Positions 2,966 through 29,225 of a DNA stretch of 41,432 nucleotides are shown piece after piece. The notes beneath the pieces were generated by a model, which was not told where the DNA came from, ran no database searches, and saw only the letters and a program-made list of their open reading frames with translations. Position numbers and translations under genes: made by a program. The stretch is taken from NCBI GenBank assembly GCA_002269645.1, contig NIVC01004577.1:1-41432 (forward strand), given 5' to 3'. This stretch comes from Macrostomum lignano (taxonomy: Eukaryota). Positions within the stretch are counted from its first letter, which is position 1; every line of letters begins with the position of its first letter.

Positions 2966-4115
2966 ATGTCCTTATCGAGCATTGCCGTCATCGTGGCCAT
3001 CTGGAGCTCTCGAGCTGCCGGTGAGACCTTCGTCTTCGACAAGAGGCCGGACCTGTGCTTCGCGGAGGCGGCCCCGGCTGCTGGCGACCAGCGCAAAGTG
3101 CTCGGAGTTGTTGACTCTCGAGTGTGCGCGGTTGAGTGCGCGGTCAACACCAGCGTGTGTTCCGTGTACCAATACCTGCCTGGCAACAAATCCTGCGTCC
3201 TTGGCAACAGCTGCGACCTGCTGCTGAAGTGGCAGAGTACTGGCGGGCCGGCGTGCGACACGCAGACGCTTCGAGATCGGGCAGCGTGCGGGACCACGAG
3301 CGACACTGCAGCCACAACTGCAGCCTCGACTGGAGCAGTTGCTACTACAACTACAACACCCACTACAACACCCACTACAACACCAACTACAACTACAACT
3401 ACAACACCAACTACAACACCAACTACAACACCAACTACAACACCCACTACAACTACAACACCCACTACAACTACAACTACAACTACAACACCAACTACAA
3501 CACCAACTACAACTACAATGCCAACTACAACTACAACACCGACTACAACTACAACACCCACTACAACTACAACTACAACTACAACACCAACTACAACACC
3601 AACTACTACTACAATGCCAACTACAACTACAACACCGACTACAACTACAACACCAACTACAACTACAACACCAACTACAACACCAACTACAACTACAACA
3701 CCAACTACAACTACAACACCAACTACAACACCAACTACAACTATAACACCAACTACAACTATAACACCAACTACAACTACAGCTCCAGCTACAACACCAA
3801 CTACAACACCAACTACAACTATAACACCAACTACAACTACAGCTCCAGCTACAACACCAACTACAACACCAACTACAACTATAACACCAACTACAACTAC
3901 AGCACCAGCTACAACACCAACTACAACTACAACACCAACTACAACACCAACTACAACACCAACTACAACTACAACACCAACTACAACTACATCACCAACT
4001 ACAACTACAACACCAACACCAACTACAACACCAACTACAACACCAACTACAACTACAACACCAACTACAACTACAGCACCAGCTACAACACTCAGTGCGC
4101 CATCTGCATTCAATG
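2966..4115 (+). CDS. Exon 1 of a secreted protein: signal peptide, PAN/Apple-like Cys domain, Thr/Pro-rich mucin stalk
   Basis: MSLSSIAVIVAIWSSRAAG is signal-like. CAVECAVNTSVCSVYQYLPGNKSCVLG fits the PAN C-x3-C-x5/6-C-x2-[FY]-x-Y-x6-C-x-L pattern. About 250 aa of TTTTP/ATTP follow. Strong donor AATG|GTAAGT at 4115/4116 (phase 1). Confidence 0.8.
3345..4090 (+). repeat. Coding low-complexity repeat (ACTACA/ACACCA units) encoding the poly-Thr-Pro mucin stalk
   Basis: In frame between the PAN domain and the splice donor. Confidence 0.9.
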
Positions 4116-4719
4116 GTAAGTGCGCATGAGAATTAAAAAACCAAATGCCGGGTTCTGGATGCTATTATAGATAACAGTGTAACAGTTTATAGCGATATAT
4201 AAAGTCGAACCACTGTAGTATAACAAGACGTAGAACTCATCTTTTGGAGGCCAATTTACTAAAAGAACACTGCGAAAAAATTATTTCTTCATCACAAAAG
4301 CAATGCTGGCATTTGATCTGGGGCAGTAAAAATTACTTATTCGTATAATATCAAACATGCACAACATATGTTACTCTGTTGTATTTTATACAGTTGTGTA
4401 GTGAAAGTTTCATATTGTTTTCTTTTTATTTGAGAAGCCCAAGGTTGTAAACACTCATAAGTGGCACTATATCTGAAATTTTTGTTTTGCTCCTTCTCAA
4501 ATCAAATATATTTGTAATAAAATGTGGCAAGCAGGTACTCTAGGTACTCTAAGCCAATATTGTAGGTATAATGATCCATTTCAATGCATATTAGTTCCTA
4601 GATACATTACATACATGCATACACAGTTTGTGCATACAACTTTGGGCTTATTAAATGAAAAAAAGACAATATAAAAATGAAACTTTCTCTACACAGGTAT
4701 ATCATACAATAGAGTAACC

Positions 4720-14504: not shown

Positions 14505-15889
14505 ATCAAATCTGCCCCTTTCAAAGTACTTCTCCCGGAGCCGAACAACAACAACGACAACAACAGAGTACGCTGCCAGTTCGCAAAAGCAGCGTCAGAT
14601 GGCGCGCTTCGAAGCTTGGGCGCGAACAAAGGCCGCACCGCCGGCAGAGTCCGGGGCGCCGGCGTCAGCCAGCAGACAGTCGACGTAGCGCCGAGTCCTC
14701 GCCTGTCCCCGCCGGTAGGGTGCCTGCAACGTAAGTAGCAGCACCTCCTGCACCGGCTCCGGACAGTAGGCCTCGGCGCGGATGACGTGGCCTGCCAGCT
14801 GGAGTCGCCGACGGCGCAGCAGATCGCTAGGACGGGCCAGGCCGGCGCGATAGAGAGCGCCGTGTTGGTGACTCGCTCGTTGCCGATCTTGAAGGCGGCG
14901 CGCAGCAGGCCAGCGTGCGCCGCGTCGACTTGAGCTCGAGCGAGTCTATCAGCGTCCAGGTCTCGGCGTTGTATAACAGGACGGTCTCGATCACCGCCTG
15001 GAACAGCGCCGCCCTCTGGCGGTCCGGTAGGGCCTCGGACTGCAGGACTGACCTTATAGACCTCCGTCCTGCAGGACGGAGCCGAACGCACTCGTCCATT
15101 CTTCTGCGCCAGGCCTCCATGCAGCCCTCGAAGGCTTGGGAATACCTACTAGCAGTTTCGTCGTCGTGGCCCTTCTGAAGGTATCAACATCAGGAAATTG
15201 AGTTTGAAACCTCCTTGAGCTTGGGAAATAGGAAAAAATCGCACGGAACTAGATTGGAAGAATATCGAAGCTGGTCTAGCACTGTGACATTCCTATTCGC
15301 GAGATACTCCCTGACACTTGGAGCATTGTGAGCTGGCTCATTGTCCTGATGAAGGAACCACGAGGTTGCTTCCCACAAATCGTGTCTCTTGTCTCGCACT
15401 GAGGGAAGCAGTTGCTGCAGGATCCCTTTGTACACATGCTGATTGATGGTTTGACCTTGGCGTAGAAACTCCATGTGAAAAACGCCTCTGACATCTGACA
15501 TTGAAGGTCTTCCACTCCTGGTGTCGTCCTCGACCTCCTCCCGCCCTCCTTAAATCGTTTGTGCCACTCAAAACTCGGGAGCGAGATACTCGTAGCATTA
15601 ACTCCATACACTTTCCGCAACAGTGCAAGTGCTTCCGAGGGCGGTTTATTGAATCGGACCAAAAACTTTAGATTGGTTCGTTGCTTGGTGCTCATTGGCA
15701 CGACGATTGTTAAAAAACTTACTGAACGTTACTAATAGCACATATTGGCACAAAACTGATGATCAGCTGAAATTGCAGGACAGAGCTCCTGTTATATGCT
15801 GCTACAGCCTGCAATATGTCGCAAATTGATAGTGCATACAGAAGCTGTGCTGTAGGCACAGTCCTGGAACTTTTCTGACGCACCTCGTA
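14505..15889 (-). mobile_element. Internally deleted, frameshifted mariner (Tc1/mariner) transposon with one TIR; interrupted by a LINE
   Basis: TIR TACGAGGTGCGTCAGAAAAGTTCCAGGAC ends at TA 15888-9. Transposase pieces: KQRTNLKFLVRFNKPPSEALALLRKVYG..FEWHKRFKEG; VFHMEFLRQGQTIN..WFLHQDNEPAH..YSSNLVPCDFFLFPKLKE; AFEGCMEAWRRRMDECVRL|REKYFE. Second TIR not found. Confidence 0.85.
14547..15076 (-). mobile_element. 5'-truncated RTE-clade LINE with (GTT)n tail and 11-bp TSD, inserted in the mariner transposase
   Basis: VLQSEALPDRQRAALFQAVIETVLLYNAETWTL..VDAAHAGLLRAAFKIGNERVTN..LRRRRLQLAGHVIRAEAYCPEPVQEVLLLTLQAPYRRGQARTRRYVDCLLADAGAPD; stop at 14595-7. TSD cggagccgaac at 14536-14546 and 15077-15087. 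Confidence 0.9.
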
Positions 15890-17279
15890 TTTGCACCACT
15901 TCAACAACGAGAGCGACATGTCGCGAGAGCGACTATACAAGCACGGAAACTATAGTTAAGTAGATTACCTGACACATAAACAGGGTTTACATTGGCAAGT
16001 GTCCCGATTTGAGCTCAGAGTGGTCTCACAGTCGGTCGAGAGTTCCAAAGCACTCAACCTGTCCTCGAATTAAGCCCATGCAGCCCGCATACTCGAGCAT
16101 TTTTGCACACTTCAACTATTCCTGCAACGGCATTTAGCGAGCGGCTTCTCAAAGCTTTCTGAGGGGGGGATCGGATTATTTAAGAATATCCCACGGGACT
16201 CTCCGCTTGATGCTTGCGAGCTGAAATCAAAACCGATTGTTGCAAATCTCTCTCGTATCCTCCATCAGCTGGGATTTCATATTTCAGCTATAGAAAATTT
16301 TCCAGCAGTTTCAGTTCCACATGCCCAGGCTAGAAAAGATAGTTTAAAAAATTGAAATTCGCTCGCTTTTCAAATGTTTTGTTCAAAAAAGCGCCTCCAG
16401 GACTTACCATGCCAACAGCCAGCGATTCTCTCCAGCAAAATAGCAGCTGAATGCCTCATAGAAACAGAACAACAGAAGCTGGCTTTCAAGGATTGAATAG
16501 TCTCAGTGCCTGCAGTCGACTCCACATTAAAATAATACTTCAATATTTAGATCGGCGGGGCTGATTGTGGCGTGCAGCCTCTATTCAACGGTTGCGTGCG
16601 TCATACAGGCAAATTTGCATACAGAAAAGCAGAGATCAATTGCCGTCAATTTTGCCTGGCTTTCAGTTACCTATTCAGCTTTGTGCATTTTTTTTCATCT
16701 GCGCTCGCAGTTACGCCTCATCGCTATAATTAAAAGGAATGAATGATAGCTCAACTAAAATACAACATCTCGCTCGGCTATTACTCTCTCCTAATCGCTG
16801 GCTTCAAAATATTGCTTCAAAGCTAAACGTTTCTTCAAAAATTGTATTTTTCAAATCGTCACTTAATTGATCCGATAATTGGCGAGAAAGCCTTTGAGAT
16901 GACAGGGTCTTCATCCACAGCATTTTTTTGTCAATGGGCTTCAAAATGATACTAAATTTTCGTACGTTATAGCCCGTATCTCATAAAAAACTTGGCGAAA
17001 ATCAGTGCTGTGCATTGCAGACTAAATAAAGCTGGAAAACTTAACTGCACACTTTTAAACTTGGAGGTAAAAGCTGTTATCGGTAAAGATCAAGAAAATT
17101 AATTTGTACCGACGAATGCAAGCTGCGTTTACTAATGTGCACCGACTAAAACAGCCGTCGGGACTGCACAGACCTCTGCATAAAAGTATATTTTCGTCAC
17201 ATTTGATTGATGATTGACAGAGAGCGGCCAATAAGACTCTAACAGTTTAACTTCGCAAAAAGGTGTTATCTGAGTTAAT

Positions 17280-17641
17280 TCAGTCATTCTCGACCTCACC
17301 ATCCAGTATTGGCGACCTTTTGCCCCAACGAAATACTCCACTTTGCCGCTTGCCCCAACGGAATACACCACTGGGCCGCTTGCCCCAACGGAATACTCCA
17401 CTGGGCCGCTTGCCCCAACGGAATACTCCACTGGGCCGCTTACCCCAACGGAATACTCCACTGGGCCGCTTGCCCCAACGGAATACTCCACTGGGCCGCT
17501 TTCCCCAACGGAATACACCACTTTGCCGCTTGCCCCAACGGAATGTAGTACCCCGTTTGGCGGTTGAACTCGGCAAAAACGTGTCCTCCTCCATTGAGCC
17601 GTCGCGAGCCGTGCTCAACAGATCCGCAACGTCGTCATCGT
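17280..17641 (-). CDS. Neuropeptide precursor exon 2: eight FRWamide peptides (GTTFRWa x1, QSGVFRWa x2, PSGVFRWa x5)
   Basis: Acceptor tttgtaattgcag|AC (phase 1). Acidic spacer DDDDVADLL..SSTA-KR, then eight peptide-G-KR units (amidation plus dibasic cleavage), acidic tail SPILDGEVEND, TGA. Variation between units is almost all synonymous. Confidence 0.92.
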
Positions 17642-17751
17642 CTGCAATTACAAATCAGCGATTAAGACGTCTTTGTCAAATTAGCATCGAAGAGCTGGAA
17701 TAGATTCTAAGGCCTGTCAGATTGGCACAACGCACGAGAGCTTAGACCTAC

Positions 17752-17839
17752 CGATCTCAGACTCGGCTTGAACAATGGCAGTTGAACAGAAGAGCAGCGC
17801 GAGAAGCGCAAGCTGCATCAGCGGGCTTCGGTTTGACAT
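17752..17839 (-). CDS. Neuropeptide precursor exon 1 (signal peptide)
   Basis: ATG at 17839: MSNRSPLMQLALLALLFCSTAIVQA|ESEI. Phase-1 donor G|GTAGGT at 17752/17751 joins exon 2 in frame across a 110-nt intron, giving 149 aa. Confidence 0.9.
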
Positions 17840-20800
17840 CTCAAGGCGGTAGTTCGATGCAAGTTCGCACACAGTATTGGACACGCGCTTGTACCTAAGT
17901 GAGGGCGATAAAGTGACAAGGAGTTACATGCCAATGCTTTCGATCGATACCGGAAATAACATCACTGAAAAGCGACTTAAAATGTACCTGGTTCTTCAAA
18001 AGCAGGCGCTCAAGTCCTCAAGACACTTAAATATGCCTAAGATACCTCAAGAAACTTACGGATCTAAACAATTATAATACGAGCTAGTTATTCAAATGCC
18101 TGGTGCGAGAGCAAACGCTACAAGGGAAAAAGCGTGATTGCCTTTTAAGGTTGAACAAATCGTCGACCATTTCTGGCCACAGCGGGTTGGGGCGCGCTCG
18201 AGGCTGGTTGGATGGCCAGCCAACCGAAAGCTGTGCTCTTGCTATCTCCATCCCTTTCTCTCTTTTTGTGTGCATTTATTCCCTGAAAATATCGTCCTCC
18301 AATAGTAGATCGGAAGGCTGGTAATTGTACTCGTAATTGGCAACCTTTTGCCAACTGGCCATAGACGGCGAGAGTTTCGTGTGCATGCGCGCTCACGCAC
18401 ACACACACACAACAGACACTAAAAGTAATTGTCCTACACTCGCGAATAACAAGCTACATGTATTAGCTGGCGTTCAAGAGTGGTCTGTTCCAAAGCTCTA
18501 GCTGCTTCCTTCCTGATTGGCGATTAGAGTGGAGTCCGGACAGCCCATGCATCCTCACTCAGTGATTTTTGCTGTCGGACTTTTATAAGTTTATAAATCG
18601 CATAAGCATCAGAGAGAGGGACATCCCGGGCTTGTCAATCAAAGCTTTTTGACGCCTAATTCGACAACAATGAGACTAGTAGCAAATTTTTTGTAAGAGC
18701 CGTGGATTAATGTGGCCGCATGGGACTCTACTCAGCTGGAAAGCTTCGGATCAAGCATGAGAAGTGACGTCTCATTTTTAACTGTAGCTAACTTTTTGCA
18801 GCCAATTTACTTAATAAAATTTTTTGAATTCTGAAGCCAAAAAATCGAACTCATACAGGGAAATTCTGTCACGGGGTTCACGCTGACCTCAAGCAATTGC
18901 TTCATTCTTCGACGTACAGGAAGTTCGCTTCTTCATCGGCAGTTTCAAAACTTGTCAGGGTAACGTCTTCAGACGATGCACTGGAGACGCTCCTGTAACA
19001 GATTAGTAGTTGTCATGAGAGGCTTTCAGGATAAAATTTTCTACAGCCTTAATAATCTTATTAATTACATATTCATTATTCAGCAACATCTTTAAAACGT
19101 GTCAACTTACTACTTTTTCCTTACCCATTTTCGATACGCATTATTTAAAACTCATTCAATTAATTCGCTGACCAAAACAAGATCCCAGCAACTTTCGACC
19201 GTCTTAAAAAAATATACAAACTTAAAGTGTGCAGCGATACTACTCGTAGTTGTATACAAAAAAATTAACTATAATGGCGTATATCGTTAATCGCGGTTTT
19301 AGAAAGTTTTAATGAAGATTTATTAATTCATGAGCTATCCTCAGATCGGCAACACTTAAAACAGAAAGTGAACTTCACTTTCTACCCCCGCATGGAACTT
19401 TGAGCAGGTCCTGTTCTCGTAAGGGATCTTTGGTCTCGCAGTCCTTGAGTCGCAGGCCAGTTTATGGTTTGCTAATCTAATTTGTGACGGGGTGCGCTTT
19501 AATTCTGGATGAAAAATTTCCAAGTCGTATTTTCAGTTGAGCATGCAGTACCATTTGAAGCTGTAGTAAAAGTGACTCACCTTCGCAGAGTTAACTGCAA
19601 TGCCAATTTCACCGTAAACTGGGTCTTCGACTAGTGTCAAGATGATGGATTATTGAGCGATTTGCTAGTGAGGCCCGGCACTGGCACAATACGAGCATAA
19701 TTCATTTTTGGATGTTTTGTATAATAAAGCCAGTCCTGCCTACCGGTAGCTCTGAGCAGGCTCAATTACTGGCAGTATTTCATGACTAACTTGGATAATC
19801 AGGCAGTAATTATTGGCAAAGAAGTAAGAGTATAATATCAAATATCTCGCTTGTCTTTAGCCACTTCATGTTATACCGGAGCAGCATCACCTCTGAATGT
19901 CTGGTTGCGCCAAAGATGTTTATCGAGCTGGGTTTCACCGGCGATTCGTCCCACGATTTTCCAGCATATTGCAAATCCGCTTCATCAGGCGACTTGAAAG
20001 GGCGGGCAGTTTCGGTGGACAACGGGGGAGTGCGAAGTGGCTGGCTGAAGTCAGCTCTCTCGGCGCCTCCCGAAACTACTTGGCATCAGCAGGTGAAGTC
20101 TCGTCTTATAGCAACTAGAAGCCGTTACAAGGGCTGTTGAACACAGAAGAGCACGAAGGCTGCATGGCCAGAGGAATCACTTTAACTTGGAAGAGATCAA
20201 CTTCAAGCCGCTTTTACGCTAGCCAACAGTCCTGATGATCCGCGGCAGACCTGGACGAACCTGTCTGAGGCCTCGTCGCCCAGTTAATTCTGCGTTTTAA
20301 AAATCATCTTTCAACCTTCAATTTAGGGATGGACTGATTGATGTAAATGGCATCAGTTTCTCTCTTGCGTGCACTTGGGCATTTCATGCATCGCAGTATC
20401 AAATATTAAATTTCTCGCTTGGCTTTCTCGGACTAAGAGTAGCTTAAACCTCGCCTTCTAGTTTACAATATTCAATATATTCGGCAAATCTAAAGGTAAA
20501 TAATAAGGCAGAGAGCAGAGGGTCATCTACGATGCGGCAATACACTCGTATTTCATTTTGATAACAAAAATTAATTAAGGCTTCATCATATCATCAGCTG
20601 CAGGATTTGAGTATAAATTTGAGTCCACACAGTGACCTCTCGGTGCTGCATGCTCTACCTCGGCAAACCGAAGTTTTAGGCTTCCGTGTATGAAACAAGC
20701 AATTTGGTAAAGCTATTGCGATATATATAATTCCACTAAAACATGGTCGGCATTGACAGACAGTCTGCCTGTCAATCAAGAGATGCAGAGCCATAGCGTG

Positions 20801-21490
20801 CCCGAGCTACTAAAATTAGATGAAGAAACATTACCGCTGCATGCAGGCCCTGATGGAGTAAGAGTATCAGATTTCGTAAGGGAAATATTCACATGCAGAT
20901 CTGCAGCATCTGGTTGTGAGGAAAATATCTCTAAAAGACTAGTTTGGCAGCAATTTTTTGTCCGAGAGCCATACAGTTAGCTCGACTAAACTCGTCCAAC
21001 AATGCATGCACTGTGAGCGCCCAGCAGCCTACTCCATGTTTCACTGGTTTTGGCCGTGACAATTTGTATAAAAATCTACAAAAAGTCTGAAATTTACACA
21101 GCAGCCGGAAATTTTCGTGCCAAAAACGCCTCGTTTTTTGTTAGAATTGTAAATAATTCCTCATACAGGTGTCCCTCCTATACCTTGCATTTTTTAGCTA
21201 ATGCATCTGGGCAAGTCAGTCCAAAGATTCACTTAGCCGCACAGCACAGATAAGATTGCAATAACAATCCCTCCATGCTGTATTGAGCGCACAAGGTTTG
21301 TGCTTTTTCCATTAGCAGATGTTTCTCATCCAGTTTTAAATTTATCGGCACCTAAAAGTACAAAAATTATACGAAACGAGCTTTCATTTGTACAAAAACA
21401 ACTCCAAAGATAAGGCTAGATCATGAAAAAGAATCGAAATCGAAAATGGAGTCCACCTTGTTTTGAGATGGGGAATCACTTGGCGTTTTG

Positions 21491-21807
21491 ATAATAATAA
21501 TAATGGCATAAATTTAATACACCTACCCTAATGTGCAGATCAGCAACCCACAGCTCAGCCGCAACTATTGCGCGGCGCATCTGAAGGCTGCGTACGGCTG
21601 TTCAGTCCAAGGACTGGGGGGTCGCCACACACAGCCTCAATTACCCCAGCTAATGCTGGCACCCATTTTACAGCTGGGTGAACTGAAGCAATGCAGAGTA
21701 AAGTGTCTTGCTCAAGGACACAAATTGTTACAAGTAGGATCGGGAATCGAACCTTCGAGACCTTCAAGTAGTGAGTCTGACGCTCTAACCACTGGGCTAC
21801 AACCCTC
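21491..21807 (-). mobile_element. tRNA-derived CORE-type SINE
   Basis: Minus strand: A box TAGCCCAGTGGTTAGAGCG, B box GGTTCGATTCCC, CORE-like GTGTCCTTGAGCAAGACACTTTACTC...CAGTTCACCCAGCTGTAAAATGGG, (TTA)n tail. Confidence 0.8.
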
Positions 21808-21819
21808 TTGAGATTCTAG

Positions 21820-22630
21820 ACGTGGAAAATGAGTCCCATCAGTTTTGAGACGTGGAAAATGAGTCAATAAGTTTTGAGTGGAAAATGAGTCCCAACTACA
21901 ATAGTTTTGAGATGTGGAAATGAGTCCCATCAGTTTTGAGATGTGGAAATGAGTTCCATTAGTTTTGAGATGTGGAAATGAGTCCCATCAGTTTTGAGAT
22001 GTGGAAATGAGTCCCATCAGTTTTGAGATGTGGAAATGAGTCATGTCAGTTTTGAGATGTGGAAATGAGTCCCATCAGTTTTGAGATGTGGAAATGAGTC
22101 CCATCAGTTTTGAGATGTGGAAATGAGTCCCATCAGTTTTGAGATGTGGAAATGAGTCCCATCAGTTTTGAGATGTGGAAATGAGTCCCATCAGTTTTGA
22201 GATGTGGAAATGAGTCCCATTAGTTTTGAGATGTGGAAATGAGTTCCATCAGTTTTGAGGTGTGGAAATGAGTCCCATCAGTTTTGAGATGTGGAAATGA
22301 GTCCCATTAGTTTTGAGATGTGGAAATGAGTCCCATCAGTTTTGAGATGTGGAAATGAGTCCCATCAGTTTTGAGATGTGGAAATGAGTCCCATTAGTTT
22401 TGAGATGTGGAAATGAGTCCCATCAGTTTTGAGATGTGGAAATGAGTTCCATCAGTTTTGAGGTGTGGAAATGAGTCCCATCAGTTTTGAGATGTGGAAA
22501 TGAGTCCCATCAGTTTTGAGATGTGGAAATGAGTCCCATCAGTTTTGAGATGTGCGAAATGAGTCCCATCAGTTTTGAGATGTGCAAAATGAGTCCCAAC
22601 TACAATTGTTTTAAGATGTGGAAAATGAGT
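21820..22630. repeat. 29-bp minisatellite (GATGTGGAAATGAGTCCCATCAGTTTTGA)n
   Basis: About 27 head-to-tail copies, no spacers. Confidence 0.95.
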
Positions 22631-26200: not shown

Positions 26201-26347
26201 TAGATCTGTTGCTAACTGATAGAAGCGTGATTAGATCCACGAGTAGATCTGTTGCTAACTGATAGAAGCGTGATTAGATCCACGAGTAGATCTGTTGCTA
26301 ACTGATAGAAGCGTGATTAGATCCACGAGTAGATCTGTTGCTAACTG
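23203..26347. repeat. 43-bp satellite (GTAGATCTGTTGCTAACTGATAGAAGCGTGATTAGATCCACGA)n with 42- and 48-bp variants
   Basis: About 70 tandem copies; resumes at 28094-28183 beyond the gypsy element. Confidence 0.95.
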
Positions 26348-27903
26348 CCGCGCCATGCCAGGCCACCAGAATTTCCCCCGCAGCCGGTCGATGGCCTTCC
26401 TCCTGCCAAATTGACCCTGGTGGGCCCAACTGACGGTCTGCTGCTGAAGCGCTGCGGGTACAACGATTTTGTTGCCCCTGAGCAGCACGCCGTCACGCAC
26501 CTGAAGCTCCCCCTTGAGCGAGTGGAAGCTGCCGGCCTGGTCTGTAGCGCCGGAGCGCCAGTTGCCAACGCCTGCATGACGAAGGTCAGAGCCGGGTCCC
26601 CAGCTGTGGCATCGCGGACGCTCTTGATGGTCGGGCCTTCCGGTGCAGACTTGACAGAGTTGAGCTGCTGCAGCAGTACGTTGTCCTGGACTGGTTGCGC
26701 GTTTAGAGAATCGCTCAGACTTGTTGTCTCTCTGGCCGGTGCGCGGTCCTGCGTCCCCAGACTCAGCAGCTGCAGAGATGTCGAGGTTGCACGGCCGAGC
26801 ACGCTGGTGCCGGTCCCTGGGACGATGATGAAGCTGGCGCGCCGGACCATTGAGCCAACCGAAACCTGCAGGCTGCAGGCTCCCACAGTGCGCAGAGGTT
26901 TAGCTGATTGAAATGAAAAAATCTTCTTTGTCGTCGGCTGCAGGCCTGGGGGTCCCGGGAGCTCTCGCCAGGCTGCCTCGGTGAGGATGTTACAGTCGGC
27001 TCCGCTGTCCACCAGCACCTGCACTGGAGTCGCTTCTACCAGCACCGTGGCAAGAGCCGCTGTTGCGTTCGTGTCGGAGGCCATCACGGTCAGGCAGAAG
27101 ACGTCGTCCTCTTCGCCCGAACTGTCGCTGCCGACCCGCAGAGCTCGCACGTCCTCCGGCCGGGACAGACAGGCCTTGGCGAGGTGATTCGGCTTGCCGC
27201 ATCGGTTGCAGGTCTTGCCTACCGCTGCGCTGCAGCTGCGGTGGCCGAAGTTGCCGCAGCGGATGCACTTTGGCTGCGTGCGATCGACTGTCTGAGTGGC
27301 TGATCTCTGCGGCTGCCCTGGCGGGCTGGACTCGCGCTTCCGCAACCGCTGCACGGTCACTGCGCTGGTCTCCATGAGGCTGGCCTGCGCCTCCGCTGCC
27401 TCCATGGCCCTGGCCACCCGGACCGCCTGGCCCAGGTCCACGTTGTCCATGGCCAGCAGCTTCCTGCGGAGCTTCTCGGAGCTGCAGCCGGCGATCAGCT
27501 GGTCGCGGATCAGCGAGTCCCGGAGGCCTTCGAATTTGCAACAGTCCGCGGTGTTGTTGAGCCGCCGCAGCCAGTCGTCCAGGGACTCTCCGGTCTGCTG
27601 GGTGCACAGCCGGAACTGGTAGCGGGTGAAGGGCAGGTTGAGCTGGCTGGTGAAGTGCTCATTGAGAGCCTTGATTAGCTTGTCGACGTCATCATCGGTG
27701 TCGGCGAGTCCGGCTGCAACGGCTTGCAGGTCCTCGCCCGCTATGTATAGGAGTTGGCGAAGTCGCTTCTTGTCAGAGATGTCAGCAGCCGCGGCGAACA
27801 GCTGGAACTGAGCCAGCCACTTGCTCCACTTCGTATGTGCCGCATGGGGCTCCTCGCGCAAGTTCAATGTGGCCGGTATGGGTAGGCTTGCTTGCGACGC
27901 CAT
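26348..27903 (-). CDS. gag-protease-(deleted RT/RH)-integrase N-terminus ORF of the gypsy element; frameshift near 26540
   Basis: Open from MASQASLPIPATLNL through WSKWLAQFQLFAAAAD (gag) and the DSG protease. The integrase zinc-binding region is in a shifted frame. Confidence 0.75.
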
Positions 27904-28093
27904 TGTAGTGCGCTTGTGTGCTGAGAAAATCATGGTCTCATGGACCGTATATTTGAGCTACTATATAGTATCACTGCCGACGTGCGGCTACAATGTTACG
28001 CAATAGTTGAGGGACAAGTCAGTGCACGTTGGTCGAGAGGGCTATAGTTAGTCATCACAGAAGAGTAAAGGCATAGACTGGGCGTACACTACA
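26348..28093 (-). mobile_element. Truncated Ty3/gypsy (Mag/K02A2.6-like) LTR retrotransposon: 5' LTR, PBS, gag, protease, integrase N-terminus; RT/RNaseH absent
   Basis: 190-bp LTR 27904-28093 (TGTAGTG...CACTACA), followed directly by PBS-like TGGCGTCGCAAGC overlapping the gag ATG. Two Zn knuckles (CIRCGNFGHRSC; CNRCGKPNHLAKAC), protease LVDSGADCNIL, integrase-adjacent ELQVRDGVLLRGNKIVVP..WAHQGQFG..FWWPGM. Confidence 0.9.
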
Positions 28094-28710: not shown

Positions 28711-29225
28711 CTTACAGAGGTCATGTGGGGTCAGGATTCTCAGACACAGGTCATGTGGGGTCAGGATTCTTAGACACAGGTCATGTGGGGTCAGGATTCT
28801 CAGACACAGGTCATGTGGGGTCAGGATTCTCAGACACAGGTCATGTGGGGTCAGGATTCTCAGACACAGGTCATGTGGGGTCAGGATTCTCAGACACAGG
28901 TCATGTGGGGTCAGGATTCTCAGACACAGGTCATGTGGGGTCAGGATTCTTAGACACAGGTCATGTGGGGTCAGGATTCTCAGACACAGGTCATGTGGGG
29001 TCAGGATTCTCAGACACAGGTCATGTGGGGTCAGGATTCTCAGACACAGGTCATGTGGGGTCAGGATTCTCAGACACAGGTCATGTGGGGTCAGGATTCT
29101 TAGACACAGGTCATGTGGGGTCAGGATTCTCAGACACAGGTCATGTGGGGTCAGGATTCTCAGACACAGGTCATGTGGGGTCAGGATTCTCAGACACAGG
29201 TCATGCGGGGTCAGGATTCTTAGAC
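28711..29225. repeat. 30-bp minisatellite (ACAGGTCATGTGGGGTCAGGATTCTCAGAC)n in the presumed 3' UTR of the RRM-Tudor gene
   Basis: About 17 near-identical copies starting 25 nt past the stop codon at 29251. Confidence 0.95.

What the first reader, a model, noticed from the sequence alone, without database searches (positions are those of the whole stretch)
17280..17839. Complete FRWamide neuropeptide precursor hidden in an apparent 30-bp satellite
Seen in sequence: two exons joined by a phase-compatible 110-nt GT-AG intron give signal peptide, acidic spacer, eight [peptide]-G-KR units and an acidic tail (149 aa). Nearly all inter-unit variation is at synonymous positions (Gly GGC/GGT/GGA, Phe TTC/TTT, KR AAGCGG/AAAAGG), unlike every other array in the window. 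Established: G-KR is the prohormone-convertase/PAM amidation signal, and N-terminal Gln can cyclise to pyroGlu. Predicted products: GTTFRWa, pQSGVFRWa x2, PSGVFRWa x5. The F-R-W-amide end is an unusual Trp variant of FMRFamide-like/flatworm xVFRFamide peptides and recalls RWamides (cnidarian Antho-RWamides, ambulacrarian luqin-type). Whether this precursor is already catalogued is unknown to me; repeat masking could easily hide it.
Basis: partly seen in the sequence, partly recalled or inferred. Interest (0 to 1): 0.85.

Follow-up and report, generated by a model that had tools for sequence, protein, structure and literature searches.

The report
Flatworm VFRWamide neuropeptide precursor gene
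The apparent 30-bp satellite is the peptide-coding exon of a real two-exon gene of the flatworm Macrostomum lignano that should yield eight small amidated "…FRW-amide" signalling peptides. The gene is already in GenBank as an unnamed hypothetical protein, modelled two copies too short, and it looks like an extra copy of the well-known short-neuropeptide-F / LFRFamide family.

Summary
On the minus strand, exon 1 (17839-17752), a 110-nt GT-AG phase-1 intron and exon 2 (17641-17280) give a 149-aa protein. It has a signal-like N-terminus, an acidic spacer, eight x-FRW-G-KR units and an acidic tail. Variation between units is almost all synonymous (7 of 8 variants, p≈3e-4).

The window is contig NIVC01004577.1 of Macrostomum lignano. 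GenBank already annotates a gene at exactly 17280-17839 from RNA-seq (BOX15_Mlig026077g1/g2, "hypothetical protein"). Its product is 129 aa, two units short, which is most likely a repeat-collapse artefact.

It is not luqin-type: it has eight copies, no WRPQ motif and no Cys pair. It also lacks the Cys motif and the intronless structure of annelid FRWamide precursors (Urechis, Capitella). Its gene structure (an ~85-nt signal-peptide exon, a phase-1 intron, then one exon carrying all peptides) matches the mollusc LFRFamide gene, the annelid sNPF/"RYamide" gene and a second M. lignano gene. That gene, Mlig013963, encodes NVFRWamide ×3 plus the family's C-terminal HxPFRFG peptide.

Best reading: a lineage-specific, multi-copy paralogue of the spiralian sNPF/LFRFamide family. 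It is a new member of a known kind. No peptide, expression or receptor data exist.

The parts
17752..17839 (-). Coding exon 1 (88 nt): ATG at 17839, signal-peptide-like N-terminus, ends one base into an Asp codon
   Evidence: Same junction in GenBank product P0001 and paralogue P0002
17765..17839 (-). Predicted signal peptide, residues 1-25 (MSNRSPLMQLALLALLFCSTAIVQA|E). It has a basic n-region (R4), a hydrophobic core at residues 7-17 and V/A at positions -3/-1
   Evidence: Hydropathy scan. By inspection only; no SignalP was run
17642..17751 (-). 110-nt phase-1 intron, GTAGGT...TTGTAATTGCAG
   Evidence: Unspliced read-through hits a stop. Position and phase match Mlig013963, Owenia sNPF-type and Candidula LFRFamide genes
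17280..17641 (-). Coding exon 2: acidic spacer, peptide array, acidic tail, TGA stop (17282-17280)
17559..17641 (-). Exon-2 part of the acidic spacer, precursor residues 30-57 (DDDDVADLLSTARDGSMEEDTFLPSSTA). The full spacer (residues 26-57) has 11 D/E and 1 K/R
17316..17558 (-). Peptide array: KR, then eight [peptide]-Gly-Lys-Arg units. GTTFRW is at 17552-17535. The seven 30-nt units are at 17525-17496, 17495-17466, 17465-17436, 17435-17406, 17405-17376, 17375-17346 and 17345-17316. Predicted products are GTTFRWamide, (p)QSGVFRWamide x2 and PSGVFRWamide x5
17283..17315 (-). Acidic C-terminal tail SPILDGEVEND. It has no HxPFRFG peptide and no Cys

Best explanation
This is a genuine, transcribed two-exon gene of Macrostomum lignano (GenBank locus tags BOX15_Mlig026077g1/g2) encoding a 149-aa preproneuropeptide.

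Inferred mechanism, from the established secretory-peptide pathway:
- The signal peptide is removed in the ER.
- A prohormone convertase cuts after each Lys-Arg, and a carboxypeptidase trims the basic residues.
- Peptidylglycine alpha-amidating enzymes convert the exposed Gly into a C-terminal amide.
- N-terminal Gln may cyclise.

The products would be one GTTFRWamide, two (p)QSGVFRWamide and five PSGVFRWamide per precursor. They would be released from neurons or neurosecretory cells and most likely act on a GPCR of the protostome RF/RY/RW-amide receptor group.

Evolutionarily it is best read as a lineage-specific, copy-amplified paralogue of the spiralian sNPF / LFRFamide / 'RYamide' family. 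The conventional M. lignano member of that family is Mlig013963 (NVFRWamide x3 plus the C-terminal HMPFRFG peptide).

Shown: the sequence anatomy, the coding-type variation, the public RNA-based gene model and the shared gene structure. Inferred: processing, amidation, neuronal expression, the receptor and paralogy.
For: Anatomy and frame.

All 8 units end in the exact Gly-Lys-Arg signal, and variation is synonymous.

The window is NIVC01004577.1, with a gene called at exactly 17280-17839 and a product reading across the same splice junction. That annotation derives from RNA-seq and transcriptome assemblies (PMC5730564). An identical second copy lies on NIVC01001908.1, as expected for the DV1 line's duplicated chromosome.

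An exhaustive phmmer search found that the only proteins with the same peptide ending are neuropeptide precursors: Urechis 'FRWamide', the Capitella homologue, annelid sNPF/'RYamide' precursors with LFRWGKR, mollusc LFRFamide and nematode FLP-18-like.

M. lignano Mlig013963 encodes APNVFRW-GKR and ANVFRW-GKR x2, followed by VHMPFRFG. That is the hallmark layout of annelid sNPF-type precursors (...[LI]FRWGKR x2 ... PHVPFRFG).

Gene structure is shared. The first coding exon and intron phase are 88 nt/phase 1 here, 85 nt/phase 1 in Mlig013963, 85 nt/phase 1 in Owenia sNPF-type (also splitting an Asp codon before an acidic run...NI|DDDIS versus ...EI|DDDDV) and 82 nt/phase 1 in Candidula LFRFamide-1.

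The literature equates annelid LFRWamide/'RYamide' precursors with mollusc LFRFamide = sNPF-type.
Against: There is no direct evidence for the peptides, their amidation, the tissue of expression or a receptor. No signal-peptide predictor was run.

The precursor lacks the family's conserved C-terminal HxPFRFG peptide.

Similarity to any other precursor outside the 7-residue peptide plus GKR is negligible. Bit scores in repeat-rich precursors track repeat number rather than ancestry: unrelated myomodulin PMSMLRLGKR arrays score highest.

A phase-1 intron just after a signal peptide is common in genes for secreted proteins (from my own knowledge), so the shared structure is supportive but not decisive.

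No orthologue from another flatworm was found.

The RNA-based public model has 6 units, so RNA support for all 8 is lacking.
Confidence: 0.8

Rival explanations
1. It is the flatworm orthologue of the annelid 'FRWamide' precursor family (Urechis unicinctus FRWamide QUP52037.1, Capitella ELT90794.1, a Paralvinella homologue), not an sNPF-type paralogue.
For: The mature peptides are nearly the same: annelid ...P[SV]VFRWamide / GPSVFRWamide versus PSGVFRWamide. Both have 5-8 copies, all ending FRW-GKR.
Against: All seven annelid-type members share invariant Cys residues (C-x3-C ... C-x-C) between the signal peptide and the first peptide. This protein has no Cys after the signal peptide. Annelid-type genes carry the signal peptide, Cys motif and peptides in one exon (the Paralvinella gene and P0038 translate directly; Capitella up to residue 148). 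This gene has the phase-1 intron typical of sNPF-type genes. Copies are separated by variable spacers in annelids and are strictly tandem here.
Confidence: 0.15
2. It is a secreted multi-copy amidated peptide made by non-neural cells (gland secretion, pheromone, antimicrobial or adhesive-related peptide) rather than a neuropeptide.
For: Nothing here shows the tissue of expression. Multi-copy KR-flanked peptide precursors also occur in exocrine and venom glands (from my own knowledge).
Against: The peptide ending is that of known neuronal peptide families. A sibling gene, Mlig013963, has the canonical sNPF-type layout.
Confidence: 0.08
3. It is a luqin / RYamide-type (ambulacrarian RWamide-like) precursor.
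For: Only the C-terminal RWamide, which is shared with ambulacrarian luqins.
Against: Luqin precursors have one or two peptides next to the signal peptide, a WRPQ/WRPH motif in spiralians and flatworms, and usually a C-terminal Cys-x10-Cys. Here there are eight copies after a 32-aa spacer, with no WRPQ and no Cys.
Confidence: 0.02
4. It is a non-coding minisatellite that is open by chance, and the gene model is an annotation artefact.
For: Five of the six frames of the array are open. The window is full of satellites. The public model is visibly imperfect, with 6 of 8 units.
Against: ATG, signal peptide, GT-AG intron and an exact G-K-R in 8/8 units. Synonymous-biased variation. An RNA-derived annotation that passed a filter against repeat-overlapping transcripts. 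Close peptide identity with characterised neuropeptide families.
Confidence: 0.02

Closest known systems
Spiralian sNPF-type precursors: mollusc LFRFamide (e.g. Candidula LFRFamide-1, A0A8S3ZGN4) and annelid 'RYamide'/LFRWamide precursors (Platynereis F8UKT9, Owenia, Paralvinella)
   Same: Signal peptide, acidic spacer and multiple short peptides ending [LVI]-F-R-[FYW]-Gly-Lys-Arg. The annelid members themselves contain [LI]FRWamide copies. Gene structure is the same: an 82-88-nt first coding exon, a phase-1 intron and all peptides in the last exon.
   Different: It lacks the conserved C-terminal PH[VT]PFRFG peptide. All copies are Trp-amide and nearly identical, in strict 30-nt tandem without spacers. 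The receptor is untested.
M. lignano BOX15_Mlig013963g1 (P0181; genome encodes 117 aa)
   Same: Same species, same 2-exon phase-1 structure, same VFRW-GKR peptide core in tandem copies.
   Different: Mlig013963 has 3 copies (NVFRWamide) plus the family-defining C-terminal VHMPFRFG peptide. The gene studied here has 8 copies (SGVFRWamide) and no such peptide. Signal peptides and spacers are not alignable.
Annelid FRWamide precursors (Urechis unicinctus FRWamide, GenBank MT162138/QUP52037.1; Capitella ELT90794.1)
   Same: 5-7 copies of x[VIL]FRWamide. In Urechis the gene is expressed in larval apical organ and ciliary-band neurons.
   Different: The annelid family has an invariant N-terminal Cys motif, variable spacers and no intron between signal peptide and peptides. 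None of these holds here.
Macrostomum propeptide Mlig032062.g1 (GRTNNKNVFRWamide and AYGSMPWamide; Dandamudi et al. 2022, PMC9234716)
   Same: Same species, same ...VFRWamide ending. This shows that VFRWamide peptides of M. lignano were already noticed and synthesised.
   Different: A different gene, a longer peptide and a mixed precursor. I could not retrieve its sequence.
Nematode FLP-18-type precursors (xPGVLRFamide arrays; e.g. Ditylenchus KAI1723125.1)
   Same: Multi-copy P-G-V-x-R-aromatic-amide peptides. The sNPF review cited here discusses FLP-18 in its C. elegans section; that FLP-18 counts as sNPF-like is from my own knowledge.
   Different: RFamide rather than RWamide, in a different phylum. 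The similarity may be convergent or very deep.
Luqin / RYamide / ambulacrarian RWamide family
   Same: The C-terminal Arg-Trp-amide only.
   Different: It differs in copy number, position in the precursor, the WRPQ motif and the C-terminal Cys pair.

Membership tests
Spiralian sNPF / LFRFamide / 'RYamide' precursors | N-terminal signal peptide followed by an acidic spacer | tested here: met
   Hydrophobic core at residues 7-17, V-Q-A|E cleavage context, spacer with 11 D/E and 1 K/R. By inspection, not by SignalP.
Spiralian sNPF / LFRFamide / 'RYamide' precursors | Several short peptides ending [LVIM]-[FLM]-R-[FYW] followed by Gly and a basic cleavage site | tested here: met
   8/8 units are x-[VT]-F-R-W-G-K-R. 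Compare family members.
Spiralian sNPF / LFRFamide / 'RYamide' precursors | Conserved last peptide ...H-x-P-F-R-F-G at the C-terminus of the precursor | tested here: not met
   The tail is SPILDGEVEND, and no PFRF is encoded anywhere in the window in six frames. It is present in Mlig013963 and in the annelid members I read; mollusc C-termini were not examined for it.
Spiralian sNPF / LFRFamide / 'RYamide' precursors | Gene structure: ~82-88-nt first coding exon, phase-1 intron, single exon for all peptides | tested here: met
   88 nt/phase 1 here. 85/1 in Mlig013963, 85/1 in Owenia, 82/1 in Candidula. Caveat: phase-1 introns after signal peptides are common.
Spiralian sNPF / LFRFamide / 'RYamide' precursors | Peptides activate an sNPF-type GPCR | not testable with these tools
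   Needs receptor expression assays.
Annelid FRWamide precursors (Urechis type) | Multiple x[VIL]FRWamide copies | tested here: met
Annelid FRWamide precursors (Urechis type) | Invariant Cys motif (C-x3-C ... C-x-C) between signal peptide and first peptide | tested here: not met
   Invariant C37/C51/C53 in alignment A2. Zero Cys after residue 25 here.
Annelid FRWamide precursors (Urechis type) | Signal peptide and peptides encoded in one exon | tested here: not met
   The Paralvinella gene and P0038 translate directly, and Capitella is uninterrupted to residue 148. Here an intron follows the signal peptide.
Luqin / RYamide-type precursors | One or two peptides adjacent to the signal peptide, with a WRPQ/WRPH-type motif in spiralians and flatworms | tested here: not met
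   Eight copies after a 32-aa spacer and no WRP motif. Family features from PMC7041311.
Luqin / RYamide-type precursors | C-terminal pair of Cys separated by ~10 residues | tested here: not met
   No Cys after the signal peptide. Note that some flatworm luqin precursors also lack it.
FMRFamide-related peptides (Pfam FARP) / flatworm FLPs | Peptides ending Arg-Phe-amide; match to the Pfam model | tested here: not met
   The peptides end Arg-Trp. No Pfam family matched at E<=1 except a chance ACAS_N hit.
Amidated neuropeptide precursor (generic) | Mature amidated peptides detectable; expression in neurons | not testable with these tools
   Needs peptidomics and in situ hybridisation.

The most novel reading that the evidence does not exclude
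M. lignano has turned the sNPF/LFRFamide system into a small VFRWamide gene family: at least Mlig013963, Mlig032062 and this 8-copy gene. This gene would be a recently amplified 'high-output' paralogue that has shed the ancestral HxPFRFG peptide and may have acquired its own receptor or role. More broadly, the annelid 'FRWamide' family, reported as Urechis-specific, and this flatworm gene might both descend from an ancient spiralian duplication of the sNPF-type gene. That would define a second, unrecognised spiralian RWamide signalling system.
Probability: 0.2. Interest if true: 0.45.

Novelty: new member of a known kind. Interest (0 to 1): 0.3.

Why it matters
M. lignano is a transgenic, RNAi-amenable flatworm model, but I found no published neuropeptide catalogue naming this gene. 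The work gives three things:
- A functional name and a corrected 149-aa product for two GenBank 'hypothetical proteins'.
- A likely flatworm sNPF-type gene pair, and therefore ligands for deorphanising flatworm RF/RW-amide GPCRs, which are considered anthelmintic targets.
- A warning that transcript-based models in this assembly lose repeat units in peptide arrays. Two of the two arrays examined were affected.

It is useful curation and a modest evolutionary data point, not a surprise to specialists.

Tried and rejected
- Literature. No held paper contains GVFRW, VFRWamide or Mlig026077. Planarian and schistosome prohormone lists (Collins 2010, text and supplements) contain no RWamide precursor. 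McVeigh 2009 and Koziol 2016, the main flatworm neuropeptide catalogues, could not be opened, so prior naming there cannot be excluded.
- Mlig032062.g1 could not be retrieved. A concatenated-peptide query gave no hit (two searches were rejected for parameters), and the paper's supplement lacks the sequence.
- A degenerate DNA pattern for two tandem VFRWGKR units found nothing in JGI metagenome contigs.
- Pfam gives nothing for the precursor.
- The two genomic copies were compared as an evolutionary test, but they are identical over window 16915-17920 and differ once over 15953-16917. The identity extends far beyond the CDS and says nothing about coding constraint. The apparent differences were a MAFFT repeat-register artefact.
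- phmmer scores are not a guide to homology here. Myomodulin-type PMSMLRLGKR arrays outrank true FRWamide precursors.
- I tested whether the 60 nt missing from the GenBank product could be a real GT-AG intron. None of the 119 possible 60-nt deletions has GT...AG ends.
- Structure prediction and RNA-family tools were judged irrelevant and were not used.

Full report
**What is in the sequence**

TRF reports a 30-bp array at 17320-17544 (7.5 copies, 93% matches, no indels) in a window crowded with satellites. Read on the minus strand, an ATG at 17839 opens an 88-nt exon. It is followed by GTAGGT, and 110 nt later TTGTAATTGCAG precedes a second exon that runs to a TGA ending at 17280. The intron is phase 1.

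The spliced product has 149 residues. It begins MSNRSPLMQLALLALLFCSTAIVQA|ESEI, with one basic residue, an 11-residue hydrophobic core and V-x-A before the likely cleavage site. Next come a 32-residue spacer with 11 acidic and 1 basic residue, a Lys-Arg, and eight units. The units are GTTFRW-GKR, QSGVFRW-GKR, five PSGVFRW-GKR and QSGVFRW-GKR. The tail is SPILDGEVEND. Unspliced, the frame terminates after 40 codons.

**Is it more than chance?**

An open frame alone means little, because five of the six frames of the array are open. The pattern of variation is informative. Among the seven 30-nt units, 7 of 8 distinct nucleotide variants are synonymous in this frame, against 24% expected from the consensus (p=3e-4). 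The only amino-acid difference is Pro/Gln at peptide position 1. The antisense frame that shares third positions shows a similar excess, so this test argues for coding but does not pick the strand. The strand is fixed by the ATG, the signal peptide, the intron and the external evidence below.

However, the 3344-4091 array lies in an ATG-initiated Thr/Pro-rich ORF with a near-threshold PAN-domain hit and may also be coding, and the 28714-29225 array has too few variants to judge.

**Where it comes from, and what is already public**

A search of 5.8 billion protein clusters returned a 129-aa 'hypothetical protein BOX15_Mlig026077g1 [Macrostomum lignano]'. It is identical to my translation except for two missing PSGVFRWGKR units. 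The search also returned a diverged 83-aa M. lignano paralogue.

The contig look-up shows that the window is NIVC01004577.1 (41,432 bp) of assembly GCA_002269645.1. It also shows that the 129-aa product is annotated at exactly 17280-17839. The accessions are PAA47094.1 and PAA62704.1 (locus tags ...g1 and ...g2) and UniProt A0A267ENZ8. The exact 149-aa sequence is in no source.

The genome paper states that the GenBank annotation was made from a genome-guided transcriptome (RNA-seq plus BLAT-mapped de novo transcripts), after excluding transcripts overlapping repeat annotations. It also states that the sequenced DV1 line carries duplicated chromosomes. So the gene is not hidden. It has RNA-derived support, and the product reads across the same exon junction (...AESEI|DDDDV...).

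A second copy on NIVC01001908.1 is identical throughout the gene. The two contigs are about 97% identical homeologues overall, but nearly identical from 15953 to 17920. That comparison therefore carries no information on coding constraint.

**The 129- versus 149-aa discrepancy**

The annotated span (560 nt) minus the CDS (390 nt) leaves 170 nt, which is the 110-nt intron plus 60 nt, or two units. None of the 119 possible 60-nt deletions that reproduce the GenBank protein has GT...AG ends. The gap is therefore most likely a collapse of identical repeats in the short-read transcript that was mapped back.

The same thing happens in a second M. lignano peptide gene, Mlig013963. The genome encodes three NVFRWGKR units (117 aa) at both loci, while the deposited protein has two (108 aa). 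I cannot exclude a real 6-unit allele or isoform.

**What family is it?**

An exhaustive phmmer scan of 1.84 billion representatives gave 291 hits. The top scores are mollusc myomodulin-like PMSMLRLGKR arrays. This shows that scores here follow repeat number and the P-x5-R-x-GKR rhythm rather than ancestry. Proteins that share the actual peptide ending fall into three groups.

(a) Annelid 'FRWamide' precursors. These include the named Urechis unicinctus FRWamide (QUP52037.1), described as Urechis-specific and expressed in larval apical-organ and ciliary-band cells. They also include Capitella ELT90794.1, a Paralvinella protein and several unnamed environmental sequences. All share invariant Cys residues before the first peptide.

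(b) Annelid sNPF-type precursors, originally called 'RYamide' (Platynereis F8UKT9, Owenia, Paralvinella). These carry xFRYGKR copies, two [LI]FRWGKR copies and a terminal PHVPFRFG. Their mollusc counterparts are the LFRFamide precursors. The literature treats these as one sNPF-type family.

(c) Arthropod PLRWamide sNPF-like and nematode FLP-18-like PGVLRFamide arrays.

A profile of group (a) also pulled out M. lignano BOX15_Mlig013963g1. Its sequence (...KR APNVFRWGKR ANVFRWGKR [ANVFRWGKR] DDTVHMPFRFGR...) has the group (b) layout. I take it to be the conventional sNPF-type gene of this flatworm.

**Discriminating test: gene structure**

| Gene | First coding exon | Intron phase |
|---|---|---|
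| Gene studied here | 88 nt | 1 |
| M. lignano Mlig013963 | 85 nt | 1 |
| Owenia sNPF-type | 85 nt | 1 |
| Candidula LFRFamide-1 | 82 nt | 1 |

In all four genes a single exon holds every peptide. In Owenia the intron also splits an Asp codon before an acidic run (...NI|DDDIS versus ...EI|DDDDV here).

In contrast, three Cys-motif FRWamide-type genes have no intron between the signal peptide and the peptides. Paralvinella and the environmental P0038 translate directly, and Capitella is uninterrupted to residue 148, after which its model looks mispredicted. The gene studied here also has no Cys after the signal peptide.

This favours a paralogue of the sNPF/LFRFamide family over an orthologue of the annelid FRWamide family. 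Two reservations remain. It lacks the family's terminal HxPFRFG peptide. And phase-1 introns after signal peptides are common in secreted-protein genes generally (from my own knowledge).

Luqin-type membership is excluded by architecture. Luqin precursors have one or two peptides next to the signal peptide, WRPQ/WRPH motifs in spiralians and flatworms, and usually a Cys-x10-Cys tail. None of these is present.

**How it most likely works (inferred from the established pathway)**

The steps are signal-peptide removal, prohormone-convertase cleavage at the nine Lys-Arg sites, carboxypeptidase trimming and conversion of the C-terminal Gly to an amide. The two Gln-initial peptides may also form pyroglutamate. 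One precursor would give eight near-identical heptapeptide (or hexapeptide) amides.

By analogy with sNPF/LFRFamide/FLP-type peptides, these would act on rhodopsin-type GPCRs of neurons or muscle. A related Macrostomum peptide (GRTNNKNVFRWamide, from Mlig032062.g1) did not gate three M. lignano DEG/ENaC channels. None of these steps is shown for this gene.

**Novelty**

The gene model exists publicly but is unnamed and two units short. I found no paper naming it or its peptides. VFRWamide peptides of Macrostomum and FRWamide/LFRWamide peptides of annelids are already in the literature. The two main flatworm neuropeptide catalogues could not be read.

I therefore rate it a new member of a known kind. 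Its value is in curation and modest evolutionary insight: a probable flatworm sNPF-type gene pair, and a wider distribution of the 'Urechis-specific' FRWamide family among annelids.

Noticed in passing
window 17280-17839; L004/L005 3001-3611: GenBank protein models of M. lignano peptide arrays lose repeat units: 129 versus 149 aa here, and 108 versus 117 aa for Mlig013963. The missing 60 nt here cannot be a GT-AG intron. This may be a systematic collapse in the transcript-based annotation.
   Followed up: yes
L004 and L005, 3001-3611 (NIVC01000606.1, NIVC01000197.1): BOX15_Mlig013963g1 is an unnamed M. lignano gene with the canonical spiralian sNPF/'RYamide' layout: NVFRWamide x3 plus C-terminal VHMPFRFG, an 85-nt exon 1 and a phase-1 257-nt intron. 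The two homeologues differ at 4 sites, 2 intronic and 2 synonymous.
   Followed up: yes
P0040, P0063, P0168, P0038, P0068, P0078, P0090, P0128, P0161 (alignment A2); L006, L007, L003: The 'FRWamide' precursor reported as unique to Urechis has clear homologues in Capitella, Paralvinella and several unnamed assemblies. They share an invariant Cys motif and an intronless peptide region. The 3' end of the Capitella model (ELT90794.1, after residue 148) looks mispredicted, and UniRef labels it as C-type-lectin-containing.
   Followed up: partly
window 26341-27933 (-): A 530-aa ORF in the GC-rich block has gag-like (PNMA, zinc knuckle) and retroviral aspartyl-protease hits. It is a fragment of an LTR retrotransposon next to the 43-bp satellite.
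   Followed up: partly
window 2966-4129 (+), array 3344-4091: An ATG-initiated 387-aa ORF has a near-threshold PAN/Apple domain hit followed by a Thr/Pro-rich repeat encoded by the 18/48/60-bp array. About 40% of inter-unit codon differences are synonymous in that frame. It is possibly a mucin-like coding exon rather than a plain satellite.
   Followed up: partly
window 15953-22570 vs NIVC01001908.1 (L002): The window is one of two homeologous copies about 97% identical, including the 43-bp satellite. The block 15953-17920 is almost identical (1 difference in about 1970 nt). That reaches about 1.3 kb beyond the 3' end of the gene (lower window coordinates), which suggests recent gene conversion or assembly redundancy rather than selection on the CDS.
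   Followed up: partly
P0002 (A0A1I8J6K9) and P0159 (A0A1I8HF14): A diverged paralogue has an almost identical signal peptide but no FRW array. In an older M. lignano gene set it is embedded in a 1150-aa model with retroelement (Peptidase A2) sequence. It is possibly a paralogue disrupted by a retroelement, or a chimeric model.
   Followed up: no
window 15276-15701 (-): A 141-aa ORF has a weak, sub-threshold hit to the HTH domain of Mos1-type transposases (E=0.005).
   Followed up: no
window 17263-17703 (+): An antisense 146-aa ORF (GTG start) runs through the array (LPQRNTPLGR repeats) and shows a synonymous excess of its own, because its third positions coincide with those of the sense frame. 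Nothing else supports it as coding.
   Followed up: partly
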